Source of the DNA: Styela clava
Lineage: Eukaryota
Length of the DNA stretch: 64,000 nt
Reading direction: 5' to 3'
NCBI RefSeq assembly: GCF_964204865.1
Contig: NC_135253.1
Location: 6,882,001 to 6,946,000, forward strand
Shown here: positions 16,017 through 28,556 of the stretch, in pieces
Numbering within the stretch: position 1 is the stretch's first letter
Layout: each line of letters opens with the position of its first letter
Notes under the pieces: generated by a model
What the model was told of the DNA's origin: nothing
What the model saw: only the letters and a program-made list of their open reading frames with translations
The model's database searches: none
Position numbers and translations under genes: made by a program

Positions 16017-16651
16017 TTATTCGCACTTTTTCTTACACTTCTGAAGCGATGTGAAGTTATTTTTGTTCGGTAGACATCCTCCCCAGATGAACTTAACACA
16101 TTTCTTTGTAATTCTGTTGTGGTAGTATCTTGGAATGTATGCTAAACATGGCCCGGGTTTTGCTCTCTGAAGACAAGTAGGGACACAGATTTTTTCGCAT
16201 TGATCCTCAGTCAGGAATCGATTTGGGTTTCCTCCAATTCCGTGATAAAAGAACTTTAAACATCGCTTTTGAAAGAAGTTATAGTAGAATCTCGGCAGAA
16301 GGGCTAACCCGAAGCCCTCGTTTTTAAGAAAAACGCATGGATTTATGATTCGTTCTGAACAAAAAATACAACAATCTTTGATGAAGCTTGCGCTTAGAAT
16401 AGAACTACAATATATTAATGCTATATTCTATCATCACTGGCATTTTGTATACTTTAAATTGCGCATTTAATTAAAGAATAGGTAACGAGTGACAAAATTT
16501 GATATAGAACTTGCTATAAAAAATGCAAGGCTAGAAACTTACTTTTACTAGATCCTTTTTTGGAAGCTTTCTTAGAGCTATTCGATACTGCATTTTCTGA
16601 TACAGCAATCACAATGCAAGCGACAATAAGCACTTTGGATATGAACTTCAT
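16017..16651 (-). CDS. Secreted tandem Kunitz protein (4-Cys + 6-Cys domains), 148 aa; exons 16651-16543 and 16354-16017
   Basis: MKFISKVLIVACIVIAVSENAVSNSSKKASKKGSSK / KRIINPCVFLKNEGFGLALLPRFYYNFFQKRCLKFFYHGIGGNPNRFLTEDQCEKICVPTCLQRAKPGPCLAYIPRYYHNRITKKCVKFIWGGCLPNKNNFTSLQKCKKKCE*. Same 109-nt first exon as the 5310 gene. Absent from the ORF track. Confidence 0.93.
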
Positions 16652-20440: not shown

Positions 20441-21929
20441 CGGTTTGTGTCTTGTGCATTGTGACTTTCAACTAATTAATTGTGCTTTATTTCCTTTAAG
20501 AAAACTGTTCTTTGTCGCCTTTGCCACTGTTTCAACTGTATAAAGTGGCCGGCTGCTACGAATTGTTCCCTACTGTCACATGCGTGACATTGAACAATAA
20601 GAAGTTAATTTTAATACAGTGTATTGTTTGTAAATGTAGCCTAGTTGGCGGTTGGGACTAAAAGTGGCGCGTTCGACATGCTTTCTATTTAGCGATTCTA
20701 AGGTATTAAGAAAACGTAACAGTTTTAACGACATTATTTTGTGGACTTTTGAGTTTCCTACAAATACTCAACAAGTTATTCCTAAATGTTTATTATATCA
20801 TATTTCATTTCAAGATATATTTTCCACTAATTAGTTGGGATATTATTGAACTTTCACTTAACGATGCTAATATATGTCGACGATTCGTTTACCGATGATA
20901 TATTTTGAAGTGACCTACCTCTATCAATATAAATGGGTACAATGCACAATATTATCGGTTATTTAGGCTACTGTTGGCTACTCTTAGTGAATAGGGTTTT
21001 CCTCAATTAAATGAACTTGAATTTCGTCATTTTAGCTATTTCTGAAATATTCTTTGTGACTAACAAACATGAATATATTATAAAAAATAAACTTTGATAT
21101 TTTTATAGTTCTCCGCTTATACACTCTAAAAACTAATAATAATTCTTAAAAACAAATTACATATTTGAGCATGGGTGATCCAAGCCTAATGACCAGATTG
21201 CCACCCAACGCTTCTTGTTTCCAGTAATTTTCTCATATTTTGTATGCATCTGATTCTTTTTCGAAAAACTACTTTTGGCTAAGACCATGAATATATAGGC
21301 AAGTATGTAAATTTGAACTTTATTTGATATACACACTTGAGCAAAACAAAATAAGTTTAAGCAGTGATCGATAATCAAAATAGCATAGTATTCTATGTTG
21401 AAACCAAAATGGATAAATATGAACTCACTGAGTGTATTGGTAAACTGAAAGTATCACTACAAAAAGTATGCTTTGAAAGCTAAAAATATTCATTACAGAC
21501 ACAAATATGTACTATAATTAAGAATGACATGCATACAGTTTGATATTTTTTTTCAATCATTTTCCATTTCTTCGCACGATGTTTCCGATTCAGATTTATC
21601 TTTCACGAAAAAAGAAAATAAAAATATTCAAGTCAATTTGGCATTTTGAAACTAAACGCGAAATGTTTCACAATACGACTTCAAATTTTTGAAAGACATT
21701 ATTTATAGAATTCTTTATCTTTATATTAGTTTGTAACAAAATGATAGAAATACCAGTTTATAGGTAAATTTATGCAATTTGTAATAAACCACTTTCATGC
21801 AATTTATTTCTAATAAATAATCGTATCAGCTATACCGATTTAACGTACTTGAACCCTCTCAGCTAATCGCTTAGCTGACAAAAACTAATGACCTTCTGCT
21901 TCCCACTTTGTGGACATGGTGGGCGTTAT

Positions 21930-24900
21930 CTAGATGGAAATTTTGTTCCAACAGTAATGATTTTTAAATAGATTGACGTGGTCAATGGCTTGGTCTGGAC
22001 AGCTTTTGTTCAACAATGGCAGGGCTGTGTTTTTTCTAATTCGCACCCTGGCTCTGTCTTGGATATTATTCTCGGCACCTTAAAACCAAAAAATGACTGT
22101 CTCTTCGTCACAGAAAAATTCAATTTGTTTTTCTTATTAGGTCTTCTGCATTAAGAATAACGCCGTACAATGTTCATAGGAATCTTGTATCAATAATCAG
22201 CTTCCAATAGTGTTAAAATTTTGTATTTTTTTGTTTTTACATTAGTCTTTATAACACTACATACATGAACAATATATATATATAAGAAGCAGGTACAATA
22301 ATTGAAGCTGAGGTTCCGAAAATTATTTTGAGGTGAGCTGTTAGACGTTTCAAGCGCTTAAACAATGATAAAAAAGTCCACAATAAACAGTAGTTGAACA
22401 TACATATCTTTGTGTCGTGGAGATGAACTGATAGTTTGGGCCGCTTTAAAATGCTATTTGGCATCTCGCGTGATCGTTTTCGCTTTCTTGAACGCTTATT
22501 TTCTGAAAAGTGATTGAAAAAGTTCAAAAGTGTGTCTATAACGTAGTGAGTAACCCATTAAGACAGGCTTGAAGATTGGACTTTTACGCCAATTGCACAT
22601 TGAATGCTTTTTAAACAAAAAACACTTAGAAAAGAAAAGCAGATGAACTTAGCAAAGCTAAATTGTTATTCTAAATTAAATTACTCTGTTGGGCAAAAAC
22701 CTTGAGCAGACTAAATACAATCCACAAAAATCAATCAATTTTCAAGAATAGCTTGAAGTCCACTTTTAGCCTGTGTGTTATAGATTTTGTTTATCAAACC
22801 GGAAAGATAATTTATTCAGGAAGTCCTACATGTCCTTGTTGGTATATAGCCTTCCTATAAACAAAAGTGCAGAATGTGTCATTGAAAAACGCAGCGTAAT
22901 TTTGTTTAAATTTCTTATTACTCCGCGTAAAATTTACTTGTGTACTTGATTTAGTATTACAAATTATCTGGTTACGTCCCTGCAATTCAATTATATAATA
23001 TTACCTGGCAATTTAATTTCAATGAGTTCCGAAATCTCTTCGCCAATAAAGTAAGTCGCATCCACACTCATTCCGTCATTCTCCATCTGCACCTTTGTTC
23101 GAAAACTCAATACCTCGGTCTCATTCTGCAGATTCTGTATTTTTTCTCAAAACAACGTATTCTCCTGCGGTTCGATGCCAACGGCATCATCCTCGATTTG
23201 TAGTTTCACAAAAACAGACTCAGCACTCGGTTTCATTTCAAATGAACCTATAATGTGAATTTTGTAGTCAGAACTACCCCACAACTCCAGGCGAAGATTA
23301 AAAAATTCTGAATCAACAGGCCTACTAAATATTGTCTTTAAAATTCTTTCTTTTTGTATCAAGGCGTGATTTACCTTTATAGCGCCTAAATGAGATTTGT
23401 CAACAGGGATGGCAAAAGTTATATAACAAAAATGATCCAATTGTACTTGGACACCTTCACGGGTTATTTGGGCATTTTTCATTTTACTCCAATTAAATTT
23501 TCGAGTCTGTGTCCGTTCACCTTTCAAAATATATACTTCCACCTGATCGCTAACGGGAATAAACCATGACGGCATGGAAACGAACGCCGATTTTAGTGGC
23601 GTTCCATCACATTCTACTTCTATTATTGAAGTTACAGGTAACCAGTATGAGGGAATCTCGAAATGCATTGGATTAGAAAAAATCCTAAGGGTTACCCACG
23701 CTCGACAGTCTCCAACAGATATTAGTTTTGGCTCCACCGTAACTTTTGTTTCTGTATAAATTGAAAATTAATTAATAGTATAGAAAATTTTGTCACTTCA
23801 TGCATAACTACTGTTCACGAACAAATTAAAATAGAAATAAAGCTGCAATTCGAATTCTTTTTTGCTTGGTAATTTCATGAACCATATTTTTAAAAAAAAA
23901 TTTTTTTCTTTTTTAGCTTACTTGTTTCTAACCACTTCAATTGATGTTCATACTGTTGAAATCTCAAATCTTCGTTATCCTAAAATAGAATTTGAGATTA
24001 GATCATTAGATAGATATCTTTTTGAAGGGCAACGAAACCTGACTAAAAATAGAAGTGTAATTAACAAATTTATTTCGAAATTCAGACAAAATAGTTTTTA
24101 TAATATTTTCCAAATTTCATTTTCCAAGAAACTATTTCTATTCGAATTGGAATGTTATGTGGCCAACACTGTTATGAATTCTTTGAAAATGGAGCAGTAT
24201 ATAATAGAGTTCATTTCGATTGATCCCGAATGAAAATGAAAAGCTTTACCATTTTGACTGAATAATGTGTAATTTAACATTTCTAAATATTTCTATTACA
24301 ATACCCTCTTACTGGAACAGACTGATATTTTGATATTGCTATTCCAACATTACATGTCTTAAAAATATACCTTGCAAGACTATGCTCTCAAATCTCATAA
24401 AAATGCTAGTTAAACAACGAAAAACAGTTTGAAATAAATAAAATATTAATATCTTTTTAATTGGTGGTGAAGAAAATTTACCGTTTGAGGTTTTTTTGTA
24501 GTCATTGGGTATTTCATAGTGCTGGGCCGAGCTTCATTCATCGCATCTCCATCACTAAAATTTTTTAGTTTTTGACATTTGTATTTCGCTATATTTTGAT
24601 TGACTACTTGATGAGACTCAAATATTGGATTGGTTTTTGTTAAATTTCAATAAGTTTTGAGTATTTTATATAAAAGGTAATTGTGATAAAGATAGATTAA
24701 TACTACGCACCACACCTAACATTAATTAGGGGGTCGTTAGTAGGTTGGAAACCAATGCTCTTGAATTATGAAGTATCGTTTGTGCTAAGACAGTGAAGCA
24801 AAGAAGACTCAGTTACGGCGTATTTTAATAATTTGGACCCAGGCAAATCTATAAGCAATATATAGCAATTTCTAATAAAAATCATATTAATTGAGGAAGC

Positions 24901-27900
24901 ATTTACTAACCTTGTGTTGCTTGCCATGACAAGTTTATTTTTGTATTCATCAATTTTTCCGTGATCTTTTTCCTTGTCTGAAATATATTTTAGTCCTATA
25001 AATATTCATCCAGATATATATTATCTAACGTTAGTTATTCTCACTTACCTATCCGCATTTTACTATGAGCGGTGCTTGTTGATGCCACATCATCGACACT
25101 TCCCATTGAAATATCAATATTTTCTAAAAACAAGTAAAATAAGGTTTTGTGTTTCATTATCGTTAAATATTCATCATACAGACTGCGTTTGATAATTGCA
25201 TATGAGTATATAGCTTAGTATGCGATATGGAAGTCAGAAAGCAAAACAATCTAAACTTCAATCAATTTCCACAATTCCTCAAATGAGAGAAAGAATAAAA
25301 AAAGTAATATAGTATTAGTGTGAGGACGGAAAAAAAATATGTATGCATGGTTTGTTAGAGATATTTTATTTAAAACATTTGTGTTTTACGTTTGAGGAAT
25401 TATGTTAGTTACATATAGCTTTAGTTTGAGTTTCACTATATATAAAAAGATTTCACTCATACGAATGAGAAAATTTCATCCATATTTACATATTTAGGAA
25501 GTCGAAGTACGCTTTGAATAATTTAATTTTAGTTCTGAAGAATATTTATATATTTTTATATATGATTTAGTATGAGGTGATGTAAAATCTCAGCTTACTC
25601 TCGGAATTCAAAGATAGATATCCAGAATCTAATGACACTGGCCGACCTGTAAAAAGGCAGAAAAAATACAAATGACCAAAGTACATAAATTGCATCACAA
25701 TATGGTTGATTTCAATTCAACTAAATTTTAATTTTGTATTCAAGATAGCTAATATATATATCCAGCTGTGTATCCAACAATAAATTCCACTGTTCATTTT
25801 CTTATGCATCGAATTTTACATATTTTGCAATTGGACAAAGAAAGCAATTGAAATGTTTTTAACTCACTTGCATTTTTTTCATTTTTTTTCTGATTTCTTA
25901 TTTTTATAAATTCTTTGTTGACGACATCGAGGGGGACTTCCATTTCCTGTTTATGCAAAATAGATGATTTCACAGATGCAATATTATGACTTTAAGTAGG
26001 CTCTATTTACTGTCAGGATAACTGAATTGTTGTTGTTCGACTTACCATATGAAATCTGATACGAATTTGCGTAATATTCGAAAAAAAAATCGATTTATTT
26101 GTTATAATTGACAATATATCATAAAAATTAAATAAAAAATAAAGGTGTTTGTTTTAAATATATTTCATTTGGTGTCTCACCTGTTCATAGTATAAACGAA
26201 GAGCGCTTTTCGAAGTTTTGAACCAGGTAATATTCAAGTTTTTCTGCTGCAAAATGAATTTGTAAAAATTAAACAAGGATGGTTATGATATAAAAAATTT
26301 AAATTTTGCCGGGGCATATTTCATAAGAAAATATGTTAAATGTTTTATGCTTATCTCAGTTTTGTTGTCTTGGTCACAGCAAAGTAGTTTCCCTTTTAAG
26401 AGAACTTATGTTTTGCCTATTTGTGCTTTTTATATGGAATGTACCTGGGTCTGAAGTTGTATTTTTCAGTTTTCGAAAGTTAGTAAATGTTACTAAACAG
26501 TTTAATTATCAATCATTCAAATATTATTCTACCTTGTGTCTGAGTAAATATGCTTTATCGACCTCTGACAAATCACCCATCCTGGACCTGCAATTTGTCA
26601 ATACCAATCTTTTGGTTACAGCATTGTTTGAAAGTATCTGCTCCAACCACCGCAATGAAAACCAGTTCAGCTCACAAAACGATATGTCTAAAACCTCCAA
26701 CTAGAATATAATTAAAAAAAATGAGGGCATTATTTAATACTTTAAAAAAGAAATTCGCCAATAATTTAATATTGATCGGAATCAATATTGTCAATCAATA
26801 TTGCCAATTGAATGTTGATTGGCATTGGAATTGGTAAACAACATTTTTACCCATAATTAACACAATTCATTTTTATCGTTTAAGCTGAGTTTATTTAATT
26901 GATATACAATTGACCTATTAATTTCGTGATATTTACCTTCATATTACTAAACAAGAGAGCTACGCCCAAATATATGGACACTTCTGTTCGCAGTACAGTA
27001 CGGTTTACCGTACCGTCAGATCACAGTCTACAAATATATTCACACCAAGCGAAGCAGTACAGTAGGACACAAAATGGCGTCCGATGTCCGCAGAACGTTT
27101 AATGACGTCATAGCAAACAATAACAAATCTCACAGAGCTAACAGAAATATTTGAAATGAATAAAAGTAATAGCCTTCTGGGGAATCTTCTTCAACCACTA
27201 AACCACTGAAAATTTCAAAGCAATTGGTCCAGTATTCGAAGAGAAAAGCTGTTTTTTAATATTTCCACTAGGTGTGTTATTCTGTGTCAAAGAACAAGAA
27301 CAATATAATATTGAAATGATCGTAATGTCCACTACATGTCCAATAATCGATATTTTATCATGAAATTTATTGGTTTTAAATCATTCTACTAAATGATCAC
27401 ATTCTGTACATTATTATGCTACATAATAACAGCTTATATTTTCTCACGTGTTTGCAACATTTGAAAACCGTCTTAAGCAACTCGGCGCAATGCAATCCAT
27501 CGAAGTTGATGAGCTTGGCTAGTTTCAATGATTTAATTGATTTCTGGCAGATGAGAGTACAAAGCTTAGAAATACAGTAGTCATCGACTGCATTTCCACT
27601 TAGATTCAACTCCAATTTCTGCAAAATATAATTTAATACGTAATAAATCAGGTATGGATTGACTAGGGTAGAAAAATAAAAACAGAATAATGAAATTCGA
27701 AAGAATTAGAAAGAAGTAAAAAAGAATATTCGAAGTTTGTTTTCTATAATAATAAAATCGCATAAACTTGTCGATATGAAATCAGCCAATTTTTTAATCT
27801 CAAAACGAACACCGTGTCCTAATTTTTCCTAATATTCATGTGAAATTTTCCCCTAAACGGAGTCTACCGATGCAATATAATATCTACCAATATTTTGTCA

Positions 27901-28556
27901 CGCACCAGAAATTTACATTTCTGTTACATTATTTATTTCTCCTCTACTTATTATATTGCTGAATTACTTGATTTTCTATATTTACAGATCACGTTCTCAA
28001 ATAGGTACCCTTTTATCGATGTCTAATGTTATCAACGATTATATTGCGATATTTTTCGTGATAATGTGATTCTCATAATCTCAAAAACGGTTTCTGCTTT
28101 GACTATTCATTGAATATACGATACGAAACATTTGAGAAGAGTCCAATTTTTTTTTCATTCCAACCTTTATGTGTAAATTGGAACGATTCTGGGACTTTAG
28201 GTCGCTTTATAATATCAAAATTTTGAAACTTATCAACCAGGGAAGCTTTTTTAACTTATTTCCATAACACACGAGGAGTGCCCTGTTTTCAGTAATCTCA
28301 CTTCTTCTATGTTGGTGTTTGCAATTAAGGACTCCAAAACATCCAAGGTCTTCTGAGAATCTTTTTTGAAGCATCCTTCGAGGATTACTTTTTTTAGGCG
28401 TGCTTTTTCAAGTTTGTGTAATACCCCGGAGAATGATTTTGTTGATACTTTCGGTAGAAAAATTTTAGAGCCATACTCTTTTTCTGATTTTTGGAAACAT
28501 CTCTTCTTCGCTTTCTTGAACTTCTTCTTCAGGAGCTCTATCGGTAATTCATTCAT
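21930..28556 (-). pseudogene. LRR-ZU5-UPA-like (PIDD/FIIND-like) gene, 13 coding exons, ~698 codons, disrupted in this copy
   Basis: Exons 28556-28260, 27618-27448, 26700-26533, 26246-26181, 25946-25868, 25646-25599, 25123-25049, 24977-24911, 24554-24482, 23979-23922, 23751-23005, 22502-22404, 22078-21930 join with consistent phases. LRR exons of 171 and 168 nt (LELNLSGNAV, LEVLDISFCEL). ZU5-like PVTSIIEVE..VSMP.W..W..VQLDHFC. In-frame TGA at 23147-23149 and first donor ATAAGT. The last two exons are less certain. Confidence 0.8.
26948..27346 (-). mobile_element. DINE-1/HINE-like (Helentron-associated) non-autonomous element in an intron
   Basis: Minus-strand end ...GTAGCTCTCTTGTTT resembles DINE-1 termini. 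Short subterminal inverted motif TGGACA/TGTCCA and an AAGAAC/AAC microsatellite. A related copy lies in the opposite orientation at 45900-47579. Confidence 0.55.

What the first reader, a model, noticed from the sequence alone, without database searches (positions are those of the whole stretch)
21930..28556. PIDD/FIIND-like protein with no death domain: LRR - degron - ZU5(HFC) - UPA-like - NLS, a candidate 'functional degradation' switch
Seen: N-terminal LRR exons, a linker of micro-exons containing DSGYLS, a ZU5-like domain ending VQLDHFC, a ~140-aa beta-rich segment, then KRSRKRKRSREMPNSILKRPK and a short tail. Established: PIDD1 (LRR-ZU5-ZU5-UPA-DD) self-cleaves at HFS, and NLRP1/CARD8 release their UPA-containing C-terminal fragment when the N-terminal fragment is degraded by the proteasome. 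Inference: this family could couple kinase-triggered degradation of the N-terminal part to release of a nuclear-targeted C-terminal fragment instead of a caspase-recruiting one. I do not recognise this architecture as described; it is the best candidate for a new system here.
Basis: partly seen in the sequence, partly recalled or inferred. Interest (0 to 1): 0.82.

Follow-up and report, generated by a model that had tools for sequence, protein, structure and literature searches.

The report
Self-cleaving-type ZU5 gene without death domain
This is a real, transcribed animal gene that joins a short leucine-rich-repeat region to a module resembling the self-cutting switch of human NLRP1, CARD8 and PIDD1 but carries no death-fold domain; it is one divergent copy among at least 120 such modules in this genome, and the reference copy is broken.

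Summary
The described features are present, and spliced RNA contigs from three studies confirm a 14-exon minus-strand gene. Its parts, in order:
- five Cys/Asn-type leucine-rich repeats
- a 155-aa charged linker built from seven micro-exons, containing DSGYLS
- one 747-nt exon holding a ZU5 domain that ends in H-F-C
- 140 further residues predicted to be beta-rich
- a basic tail (KRSRKRKRSR…KRPK), with no death-fold domain

Pfam and a 1.8-billion-protein search find nothing directly. A profile of 89 same-genome paralogs does match (hhalign 96%, E 2e-9), with HFC on their xF[S/C/T] site. At least 122 such modules exist here. Phe at -1 is kept in 84 of 90 aligned copies and Ser/Cys/Thr at +1 in 86 of 90, so self-cleavage is probably a family trait.

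Paralogs sit behind BTB-Kelch or NACHT domains, or in front of a caspase, while the genome has only 19 Death and 4 CARD hits.

The "UPA-like" half could not be verified. The reference allele carries a 33-nt deletion in the ZU5 core, a stop codon and a 1-nt indel; the transcripts carry none of the three.

The degradation-and-nuclear-release model remains conjecture. First readers noted similar modules elsewhere in this genome.

The parts
28302..28556 (-). Exon 1. ATG at 28554-28556, a basic N-terminus (MNELPIELLKKKFKKAKK...) and the first leucine-rich repeat.
   Evidence: Open frame with a stop 9 nt upstream of the ATG. The RNA contigs run on from 27620 into sequence that matches 28304 onward. 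GT donor after 28302.
27448..27618 (-). Exon 2, 171 nt, phase 0. Two leucine-rich repeats (KLELNLSGNAV..., LKLAKLINFDG...).
   Evidence: RNA joints 26700/27448 and 27620/28304. The only PDB rows at E about 2 are NLRP1 LRR chains, which is not significant.
26533..26700 (-). Exon 3, 168 nt, phase 0. Two leucine-rich repeats (LEVLDISFCEL..., LVLTNCRS...).
   Evidence: RNA joints. Pfam LRR_1 gives only E 0.31.
23922..26246 (-). Seven micro-exons, E4-E10: 26181-26246, 25868-25946, 25599-25646, 25049-25123, 24911-24977, 24482-24554 and 23922-23979. They encode a 155-aa charged linker.
   Evidence: All joints were seen in the RNA contigs with GT..AG borders, except E10/E11, which was inferred from sequence and from the contig lengths. 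Composition is 26 K+R, 24 D+E and 24 S+T.
25612..25629 (-). DSGYLS, which matches the beta-TrCP-type DSG-hydrophobic-x-S pattern.
   Evidence: Translation. Found in 0.2% of shuffles. Function not tested.
23005..23751 (-). Exon 11. The ZU5 domain runs to 23429. The H-F-C site follows, then 140 residues predicted to be beta-rich.
   Evidence: hhalign against 89 paralogs gives Prob 96.2, E 2.4e-9 for residues 30-117. Against 10 paralogs it gives E 2.9e-5. ESM Atlas score 0.97 to ZU5/UPA/FIIND clusters. The AlphaFold model has pLDDT 73-93 over residues 21-120. Fold neighbours are GAIN, ankyrin ZU5, CARD8, UNC5b and NLRP1 at Z 4.8-6.7.
23426..23434 (-). H-F-C codons. The predicted scissile bond lies between Phe (23429-23431) and Cys (23426-23428).
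   Evidence: Aligned with xF[S/C/T] of the paralogs. In the model it lies in the loop between strands 99-104 and 110-115. Model residues 1-107 align to NLRP1 1094-1212, and that chain ends at the cut site.
23694..23695 (-). Site where the reference lacks 33 in-frame bases that are present in all RNA alleles. They encode VPDHMFDGDAT.
   Evidence: table 5c. Reconstruction. The 11-column gap falls on the family's conserved 'xFPxgALdxxT' segment.
23147..23149 (-). In-frame TGA in the reference. It is CGA (Arg) in all four RNA runs.
   Evidence: for the stop. table 3 (23149 A>G)..
22404..22502 (-). Exon 12. Basic, NLS-like KRSRKRKRSR...KRPK at 22435-22497.
   Evidence: RNA joints 23005/22502 and 22402/22076. 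Translation.
21991..22078 (-). Exon 13. The reference is one base shorter at 22029 than the RNA alleles, so the two read different tail frames.
   Evidence: tables 4, 5 and 8..
21557..21603 (-). Tentative coding part of the last exon. In the RNA-allele frame it reads ...QDKSESETSCEEMEND followed by a stop.
   Evidence: The loose end of the contigs at 21991 matches 21574-21603 with 2 mismatches. The exact junction is unresolved because no canonical GT follows 21991.
22685..22853 (-). Alternative 3' exon used in one run (X6), joined to 23004. It runs quickly into stops.
   Evidence: table 8 (record 20). Frames.

Best explanation
The locus is a genuine, expressed gene of about 690 codons for a cytosolic protein.

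Architecture, shown or well supported. From the N-terminus the protein has:
- five Cys/Asn-type leucine-rich repeats
- a 155-aa disordered linker
- one ZU5 domain ending in His-Phe-Cys
- a 140-aa segment predicted to be beta-rich, whose fold is unproven
- a basic, low-complexity tail of about 80 aa

It has no NACHT, Death or CARD domain. It is an old, very divergent singleton within a lineage-specific family of at least 122 single-exon ZU5-plus-second-half modules. That family keeps the buried Phe at -1 and a Ser/Cys/Thr nucleophile at +1.

Mechanism, inferred. The protein most likely cuts itself between Phe and Cys by an N-to-S acyl shift, as PIDD1, NLRP1 and CARD8 do with Ser. This would give an N-terminal piece (repeats, linker, ZU5) and a C-terminal piece (beta segment, basic tail) that stay together until the N-terminal piece is removed or disturbed.

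Allele state, shown. The sequenced reference haplotype is a damaged allele. It has a 33-nt deletion in the ZU5 core, a premature stop and a 1-nt indel. Alleles expressed in three other studies are open across all three sites, except that the X6 contig has its own 2-nt deletion at 23272.
For: - Gene and splicing: the contigs join the exons at GT..AG borders in four runs from three studies. The frame stays open across all exons once the borders are set.
- ZU5 by profile: hhalign Prob 96.2, E 2.4e-9 to a profile of 89 paralogs, with HFC on their motif. All 10 paralogs tested hit Pfam ZU5. The family profile hits ankyrin ZU5 chains at 5e-10.
- ZU5 by language model and fold: ESM Atlas 0.97 with ZU5/UPA/FIIND clusters. 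The AlphaFold model scores pTM 0.70 and puts HFC in a loop between two strands. A full search of 48,161 PDB chains places GAIN, ankyrin ZU5, CARD8, UNC5b and NLRP1 ZU5 among the top 50. Model residues 1-107 align to NLRP1 1094-1212.
- Family constraint: Phe at -1 in 84 of 90 copies and S/C/T at +1 in 86 of 90 (S 63, C 18, T 5), while -2 varies. This matches the mutagenesis in PMC3210808: Phe and the +1 nucleophile are essential and -2 is marginal.
- No death fold: the transcripts end in small basic and acidic exons. None of the genome's Death or CARD hits lies near the gene.
- Broken reference allele.
Against: - Pfam gives no ZU5, FIIND or UPA hit on the exon itself at E up to 1.
- phmmer against 1.84 billion representatives finds nothing.
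- All fold matches are below Z 8 and are mixed with unrelated beta sandwiches.
- The segment after HFC shows no similarity to the paralogs' second half and is modelled at pLDDT 43-62.
- The model was built from the damaged allele. It lacks 11 core residues and the last 47 residues of the exon.
- Differences between the reference and the RNA alleles in exon 11 run at 12 non-synonymous to 4 synonymous. One RNA allele (X6) has a 2-nt deletion at 23272. The gene may therefore be under little constraint.
- Cleavage was not and cannot be tested here.
Confidence: 0.6

Rival explanations
1. Phosphorylation of DSGYLS recruits a beta-TrCP-type ligase. The proteasome then removes the N-terminal fragment. 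The freed C-terminal fragment enters the nucleus through KRSRKRKRSR...KRPK and signals there, in place of recruiting a caspase.
For: - DSGYLS lies in a disordered, micro-exon-encoded linker and is rare by chance (0.2% of shuffles).
- The tail has 18 K+R in 62 residues.
- The order disordered region, ZU5, cut site, second half mirrors CARD8, whose disordered N-terminus drives proteasomal release (PMC9213247, abstract listed).
- The transcripts contain no death-fold exon.
Against: - Every step after cleavage is analogy.
- The motif was chosen after the fact, and no orthologue exists to test whether it is conserved.
- A polybasic tract can equally bind nucleic acid or acidic lipids.
- The C-terminal tail differs between alleles.
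- The UPA identity of the released piece is unverified.
Confidence: 0.12
2. A decaying family member. The gene descends from the self-cleaving ZU5 family and keeps HFC by inheritance. It is now a polymorphic pseudogene, or a transcript without a selected function, and the odd architecture is a relic.
For: - The reference allele has three disruptive lesions and allele X6 has a 2-nt deletion.
- 12 of the 16 exon-11 differences are non-synonymous.
- It has the longest terminal branch in the family tree, 2.64 changes per site.
- It has no close paralogue or detectable orthologue.
- Its second half has diverged beyond recognition.
Against: - Alleles in runs X1, X2 and X5 keep about 690 codons open across 14 exons and are spliced correctly.
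- The repeat exons are nearly invariant between alleles, with 1 difference in 341 nt.
- Segregating null alleles and fast change are usual in immune-type gene families.
- Phe at -1, Cys at +1 and, in the RNA alleles, the conserved Pro of the ZU5 core are all retained.
Confidence: 0.24
3. A non-cleaving ZU5 scaffold. The domain acts only as a binding module, as in ankyrins, UNC5 and ZO-1, and HFC does not cut.
For: - The best sequence-level PDB matches of the family profile are the non-cleaving ankyrin and ZO-1 ZU5 domains.
- No cleavage data exist for this protein.
Against: - Non-cleaving ZU5 domains lack the motif. UNC5b has Leu in place of the Phe (PMC3210808).
- This family keeps Phe and a nucleophile in 84 and 86 of 90 copies and lets S, C and T interchange. 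That pattern is expected for a catalytic nucleophile and not for a structural residue.
Confidence: 0.1

Closest known systems
FIIND (ZU5-UPA) of NLRP1 and CARD8
   Same: - A ZU5 domain ends in x-Phe | nucleophile, in a loop before the next strand.
- Leucine-rich repeats lie upstream, as in NLRP1.
- A disordered region lies upstream, as in CARD8.
- Model residues 1-107 align to NLRP1 1094-1212, and that chain ends at the cut site.
- CARD8 aligns over model residues 1-172 at Z 5.7-5.8.
   Different: - There is no Pfam FIIND hit.
- The nucleophile is Cys, not Ser, and His stands at -2 as in PIDD1.
- There is no CARD and no NACHT or PYD.
- The second half is not verifiably UPA.
- The C-terminal output is a basic low-complexity tail.
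PIDD1 (LRR, ZU5, ZU5, UPA, Death)
   Same: Leucine-rich repeats lie upstream of a ZU5 domain with His-Phe-nucleophile.
   Different: - There is one ZU5, not two.
- There is no Death domain.
- The repeats are of the Cys/Asn ribonuclease-inhibitor-like kind. By my own knowledge PIDD1's repeats are of another type; this was not tested here.
- A 155-aa linker separates the repeats from the ZU5 domain.
Lineage-specific ZU5 expansions and NACHT-ZU5 proteins of early-branching animals
   Same: - Zhang et al. [quoted passage not shown]
- NACHT-Zu5 architectures are listed for sponges, ctenophores and cnidarians (PMC12909245).
- This genome has at least 122 modules, including a NACHT-ZU5 open reading frame.
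   Different: - Those reports give domain counts only, not cleavage motifs.
- The architecture seen here (repeats, linker, ZU5, basic tail) was not found described in three literature searches.
- Cys-type cut sites, BTB-Kelch-ZU5 fusions and ZU5-caspase fusions were also not found described in those searches.
GAIN/GPS domain of adhesion GPCRs and the Nup98 autoproteolytic domain
   Same: - These are autoproteolytic beta-sandwich domains that cut before a Ser/Thr/Cys. Zhang et al. place them in one ZU5 superfamily.
- GAIN domains are the top fold matches over model residues 1-115 (Z 6.7, rmsd 2.9, 105 aligned).
   Different: - GAIN domains are extracellular and preceded by a helical subdomain.
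- No sequence-level relation to them was detected here.

Membership tests
ZU5 domain (Pfam PF00791) | Direct match to the Pfam model above its cut-off | tested here: not met
   No hit at E up to 1 on the exon. The whole-genome ZU5 scan lists 20 places and none is this one.
ZU5 domain (Pfam PF00791) | Profile-level homology to proteins that do pass the Pfam model | tested here: met
   hhalign Prob 96.2, E 2.4e-9 against 89 paralogs. All 10 paralogs scanned hit PF00791. The family profile hits ankyrin ZU5 at 5e-10.
ZU5 domain (Pfam PF00791) | ZU5 beta-sandwich fold | tested here: inconclusive
   The model scores pTM 0.70, with pLDDT 73-93 over the domain. ZU5 and GAIN chains recur among the top 50 matches, but all are below Z 8 and mixed with other sandwiches.
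Autoproteolytic ZU5 (PIDD1, NLRP1, CARD8, UNC5CL type) | Buried Phe at -1 and a Ser/Thr/Cys nucleophile at +1, at the end of the ZU5 domain | tested here: met
   H-F-C is aligned to the paralogs' site. It lies in a loop between two strands of the model.
Autoproteolytic ZU5 (PIDD1, NLRP1, CARD8, UNC5CL type) | Actual self-cleavage into two fragments | not testable with these tools
   This needs expression of a tagged intact-allele cDNA.
FIIND (Pfam PF13553) | Match to the FIIND model | tested here: not met
   No hit on the exon. The genome-wide best is E 0.32, at another place.
UPA domain | Recognisable UPA sequence or fold after the cut site | tested here: inconclusive
   No Pfam UPA hit. No signal against the paralogs' second half (Prob 0.1). 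ESM Atlas 0.88 to UPA clusters, which is a lead only. Modelled at pLDDT 43-62.
PIDD1 orthologue | Two ZU5 domains and a C-terminal Death domain | tested here: not met
   There is one ZU5. The transcripts end without a Death domain. No Death hit lies near the gene.
NLRP1 / CARD8 orthologue | C-terminal CARD, and NACHT for NLRP1 | tested here: not met
   The first coding exon starts 9 nt after a stop codon and there is no NACHT. The genome has only 4 CARD hits and none is here.
Ribonuclease-inhibitor-like / Cys-containing leucine-rich repeats | Match to LRR models | tested here: inconclusive
   LRR_1 gives E 0.31 on exon 3 only. The LRR_6 genome scan does not list this place. Five LxxLxLxx[C/N] units of 25-32 aa can be read directly in the translation.
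beta-TrCP phosphodegron | DSG-hydrophobic-x-S in a disordered region that is bound and phosphorylated | not testable with these tools
   The motif is present and rare by chance. Binding and phosphorylation are unknown.

The most novel reading that the evidence does not exclude
In this animal the self-cleaving ZU5 module, with its second half, acts as a general plug-in switch that works without death-fold adaptors.
- Diverse sensor heads (leucine-rich repeats here; BTB-BACK-Kelch and NACHT in paralogs) hold back a C-terminal fragment.
- Once freed, that fragment acts through its own second half and whatever is fused to it. In two paralogs that is a caspase. Here it is a nuclear or nucleic-acid-binding basic tail.
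- Fragments from sensor-type members could nucleate the caspase-bearing members through contacts between second halves.
- The Cys-type members would in addition expose an N-terminal Cys, which is a conditional degradation signal.
Probability: 0.15. Interest if true: 0.85.

Novelty: new variant of a known kind. Interest (0 to 1): 0.55.

Why it matters
Self-cleaving ZU5-UPA modules are known as the release mechanism of a few vertebrate death-fold proteins: NLRP1, CARD8, PIDD1 and UNC5CL.

This gene and its family show the same cut-site signature used more than a hundred times in one invertebrate genome. It is joined to heads and tails that are not death-fold domains. Cys replaces Ser in a fifth of the copies.

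If cleavage is confirmed, the 'guard by degradation' logic of NLRP1 and CARD8 would be older and more modular than thought. It would have outputs other than caspase recruitment through CARD or Death domains. The two ZU5-caspase fusions give a direct way to test this.

The particular locus is a weak starting point. It is the most divergent member, its second half is unverified, and the reference allele is broken.

Tried and rejected
Searches that found nothing:
- Direct Pfam scan of six exon pieces. No ZU5, FIIND, UPA, F-box or Death hit.
- phmmer of the exon against PDB. Only a chance row.
- phmmer against 1.84 billion cluster representatives. Zero hits.
- Word-index search with an alignment of the exon plus ten paralogs. 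Zero hits.
- Own-genome search with the ZU5 exon and with a repeat exon. Only self matches plus one weak row, so there is no close paralogue.
- Pfam LRR_6 scan of the genome. 17 hits, none here.
- hhalign of the post-HFC part against the family's second half. No signal.

Weak structure results:
- AlphaFold without an alignment gave pLDDT 34.6 and was unusable.
- Foldseek against PDB gave nothing at E <= 0.001. The best rows were AnkG ZU5-UPA and rat NLRP1 at probability 0.91 and 0.85.

Ideas dropped:
- A tiny intron that would skip the TGA. GT..AG pairs of 22-31 nt exist there, but the RNA contigs run straight through.
- Selenocysteine or read-through at the TGA. The RNA alleles have CGA.
- A hydrophobic tail anchor (...VCMSFLIIVHICVC). 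It arises only in the reference frame, which is one base short at 22029.
- An F-box at the N-terminus (LPIELLKKKF followed by Cys-type repeats). Pfam finds none. I keep it only as a remark.
Full report
**What is in the sequence**

The window is AT-rich eukaryotic DNA with about 33% G+C. It comes from a 377-Mb assembly whose organism is not disclosed.

I laid contigs from four public runs on 21700-27699. The runs come from three studies, all labelled with the same organism code. The contigs skip ten introns with CT..AC ends on the plus strand, which is GT..AG on the minus strand. The runs therefore hold spliced transcripts.

After moving each border by the offsets the tool reported, and after placing the E10/E11 acceptor at 23753-23752, the frame stays open from the ATG at 28556 through thirteen exons. 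The count of contig letters between fixed points then agrees to the base.

A fourteenth exon is shown by the loose end at 21991. That loose end matches 21574-21603 with two mismatches. The exact junction is unclear, because no GT follows 21991 in the reference.

One run uses an alternative terminal exon at 22685-22853.

**The reference copy is damaged**

All four RNA runs differ from the assembly at three disruptive places.
- They carry 33 extra in-frame bases at 23694/23695, encoding VPDHMFDGDAT.
- They read CGA (Arg) where the assembly has the in-frame TGA at 23147-23149.
- They have one extra base at 22029, which changes the tail frame.

In the alignment with paralogs, the reference shows an 11-column gap exactly where the family has its conserved 'xFPxgALdxxT' segment. 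The RNA insert fills that gap and restores the nearly invariant Pro.

In the RNA frame the protein ends ...RISKKHSSAIVEQKLSRPQDKSESETSCEEMEND. The hydrophobic end seen in the reference frame is an artefact of the missing base.

Unspliced contigs over the introns differ from the assembly by about 2%, as exon 11 does, so these are alleles of this locus and not a paralogue.

Variation between alleles is uneven.
- Exon 11 carries 16 substitutions against the reference, 12 of them non-synonymous.
- The two repeat exons carry 1 difference in 341 nt.
- Allele X6 has a 2-nt deletion at 23272, seen at depth 8.

I could not lay the DNA runs of the assembly's own sample.

**What the 747-nt exon is**

Direct searches fail.
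- Pfam finds nothing.
- phmmer against PDB finds nothing real.
- phmmer against 1.84 billion representatives finds nothing.

The ESM Atlas places the exon next to ZU5, UPA, FIIND and UNC5B clusters, with a score of 0.97 and 189 of 256 features shared.

A Pfam ZU5 scan of the animal's own genome gave 20 places, several of them in long single exons. A profile made from ten of these plus the query then found 122 places. All ten hit Pfam ZU5 individually. The family profile hits the ZU5 domains of ankyrins and ZO-1 in PDB at 5e-10 to 8e-6.

The query aligns to the ten-member profile at E 2.9e-5. It aligns to an 89-member profile at Prob 96.2, E 2.4e-9 over residues 30-117, with HFC on the family's xF[S/C/T].

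With 25 paralogs as its alignment, AlphaFold gives pTM 0.70 and pLDDT 73-93 over residues 21-120. His106-Phe107-Cys108 sit in the loop between strands 99-104 and 110-115.

Fold searches give only middling scores.
- Foldseek's best rows are AnkG ZU5-UPA and rat NLRP1.
- A re-alignment of Foldseek's own top chains gives rat NLRP1 Z 6.6, ankyrin-B Z 6.0 and CARD8 Z 5.8, among leukocidins and arrestins.
- The search of 48,161 chains that does not depend on Foldseek puts five GAIN domains, three ankyrin ZU5 entries, CARD8, UNC5b and human NLRP1 ZU5 in the top 50.
- In that search, model residues 1-107 lie on NLRP1 1094-1212, which is the fragment ending at the cut site.

No single score is decisive. 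Together with the profile result they make ZU5 secure.

**The second half is not secure**

The 140 residues after HFC are predicted to be beta-rich but at pLDDT 43-62. They give no signal against the paralogs' own second half (Prob 0.1). Taken alone they reach only 0.88 with UPA clusters in the Atlas, which that tool calls a lead.

The model had to be built from the damaged allele. It lacks 11 core residues and the last 47 residues of the exon, because tools do not accept a read-through and the intact allele has no reference.

**Is it a cutting ZU5?**

In 90 aligned copies the residue before the site is Phe in 84. The residue after it is Ser in 63, Cys in 18 and Thr in 5. The residue at -2 is free: E 27, H 22, K 16, D 10, S 8.

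This is the pattern that mutagenesis of CARD8 and NLRP1 defined. Phe is a buried anchor that strains the bond, the next residue is the nucleophile, and -2 is nearly dispensable. The non-cutting UNC5b has Leu at the Phe position (PMC3210808).

Interchange of Ser, Cys and Thr is what one expects of a catalytic nucleophile. I therefore take self-cleavage to be a trait of the family and likely for this member, which has H-F-C. This is inference.

**The rest of the protein**

Exons 1-3 read as five units of LxxLxLxx[C/N] of 25-32 aa. Exons 2 and 3 are 171 and 168 nt in phase 0, two repeats each. By my own knowledge, that is the layout of ribonuclease-inhibitor and NLR repeat exons.

Database support is weak.
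- LRR_1 gives E 0.31.
- LRR_6 finds nothing here.
- The only PDB rows for exon 2, at E about 2, are NLRP1 repeat chains.

The linker is 155 aa with 26 K+R, 24 D+E and 24 S+T. DSG[hydrophobic]xS occurs in 0.2% of shuffles, but it was chosen after the fact.

The tail has 18 K+R in 62 residues. There is no NACHT, since the ATG follows a stop by 9 nt. The transcripts contain no Death or CARD exon.

**Family context**

Only 19 Death and 4 CARD hits exist in the genome, against at least 122 ZU5 modules.

Long single open frames show the module in three other settings.
- Behind BTB-BACK-Kelch: 1236 aa with an HFC site, the frame ending soon after the module, and at least five copies on C3.
- Behind NACHT: 1291 aa with an RFC site.
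- In front of a caspase: 586 and 580 aa with an EFS site and a QFCRG active site.

About 40 copies lie roughly 0.1 Mb apart on C2. In the family tree this gene has the longest terminal branch, 2.64 changes per site, and no close relative.

Two notes by first readers on other pieces of the same genome describe similar modules.

**Comparison with what is known**

In how it probably works, the gene is closest to the FIIND of NLRP1 and CARD8 and to PIDD1. It is a member of none of them. FIIND and UPA models do not match, there is one ZU5, and there is no CARD, Death or NACHT domain.

Expanded ZU5 groups in sponges and NACHT-Zu5 architectures in early-branching animals have been mentioned in the literature (PMC3482391; PMC12909245). 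Three literature searches found no description of this architecture, of Cys-type cut sites, or of ZU5-caspase fusions. Those searches cover open-access text only.

**Verdict**

ZU5 with a cleavage-type motif and no death fold holds. UPA is open. The degron, proteasomal release and nuclear output are conjecture.

I class the gene as a new variant of a known kind. Its interest is moderate for the locus itself and higher for the family it led to.

Noticed in passing
L116:2754-4511:- (G000:C6 about 18.83 Mb) and L117:2943-4682:+ (G000:C2 about 5.94 Mb): Two single open reading frames of 586 and 580 aa join a family-type ZU5 module (site EF|S) directly to a caspase domain. Pfam Peptidase_C14 scores 1.6e-33 and 8.5e-40, and the active site reads QFCRG. 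No CARD or Death domain lies between them. In effect this is a CARD8-to-caspase link collapsed into one chain.
   Followed up: partly
L113:1316-5023:- (G000:C3 21.27 Mb; paralogs at 21.24-21.51 Mb): A 1236-aa open frame reads BTB, BACK, Kelch, then ZU5 with an HFC site and a second half, and ends soon after. It is a CUL3-adaptor-like head placed in front of the self-cleaving module. At least five copies exist.
   Followed up: partly
L114:1632-5504:- (G000:C19 15.69 Mb): A 1291-aa open frame has a NACHT domain (1.5e-13) followed by a family-type ZU5 module with an RFC site.
   Followed up: partly
G000:C2 1.07-4.95 Mb and G000:C6 20.7-22.4 Mb: About 40 ZU5 modules of roughly 270 aa lie about 0.1 Mb apart on C2, mostly of EFS and KFS type. 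A second array, of SFC type, lies on C6. Many copies are nearly identical, which suggests very large and young tandem repeat units.
   Followed up: no
L118:1994-3916:-, L119:3585-4850:- and L119:5700-6326:- (G000:C6 18.78-18.84 Mb): Next to one ZU5-caspase gene lie two Death-domain caspases and a 209-aa CARD-plus-Death protein resembling the CRADD/RAIDD adaptor. Together they form a small cluster of cell-death genes.
   Followed up: partly
window 26940-27260 (intron 2 of the gene): A 310-bp interspersed repeat has at least 1,700 candidate copies at 93-95% identity across the genome. Its depth in the RNA contigs is several hundred to several thousand, against less than 100 on the gene's exons. 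It has no Rfam match.
   Followed up: partly
window 28517-28556: The N-terminus MNELPIELLKKKF resembles the opening of an F-box, and the repeats that follow are of the Cys-containing kind found in FBXL proteins. Pfam finds no F-box. If it were real, the head would be a ubiquitin-ligase adaptor, like the BTB-Kelch paralogs.
   Followed up: partly
window 16020-16427 (-): An open frame of 136 aa shows two Kunitz/BPTI-like cysteine patterns. It lies downstream of the gene and is unrelated to it.
   Followed up: no
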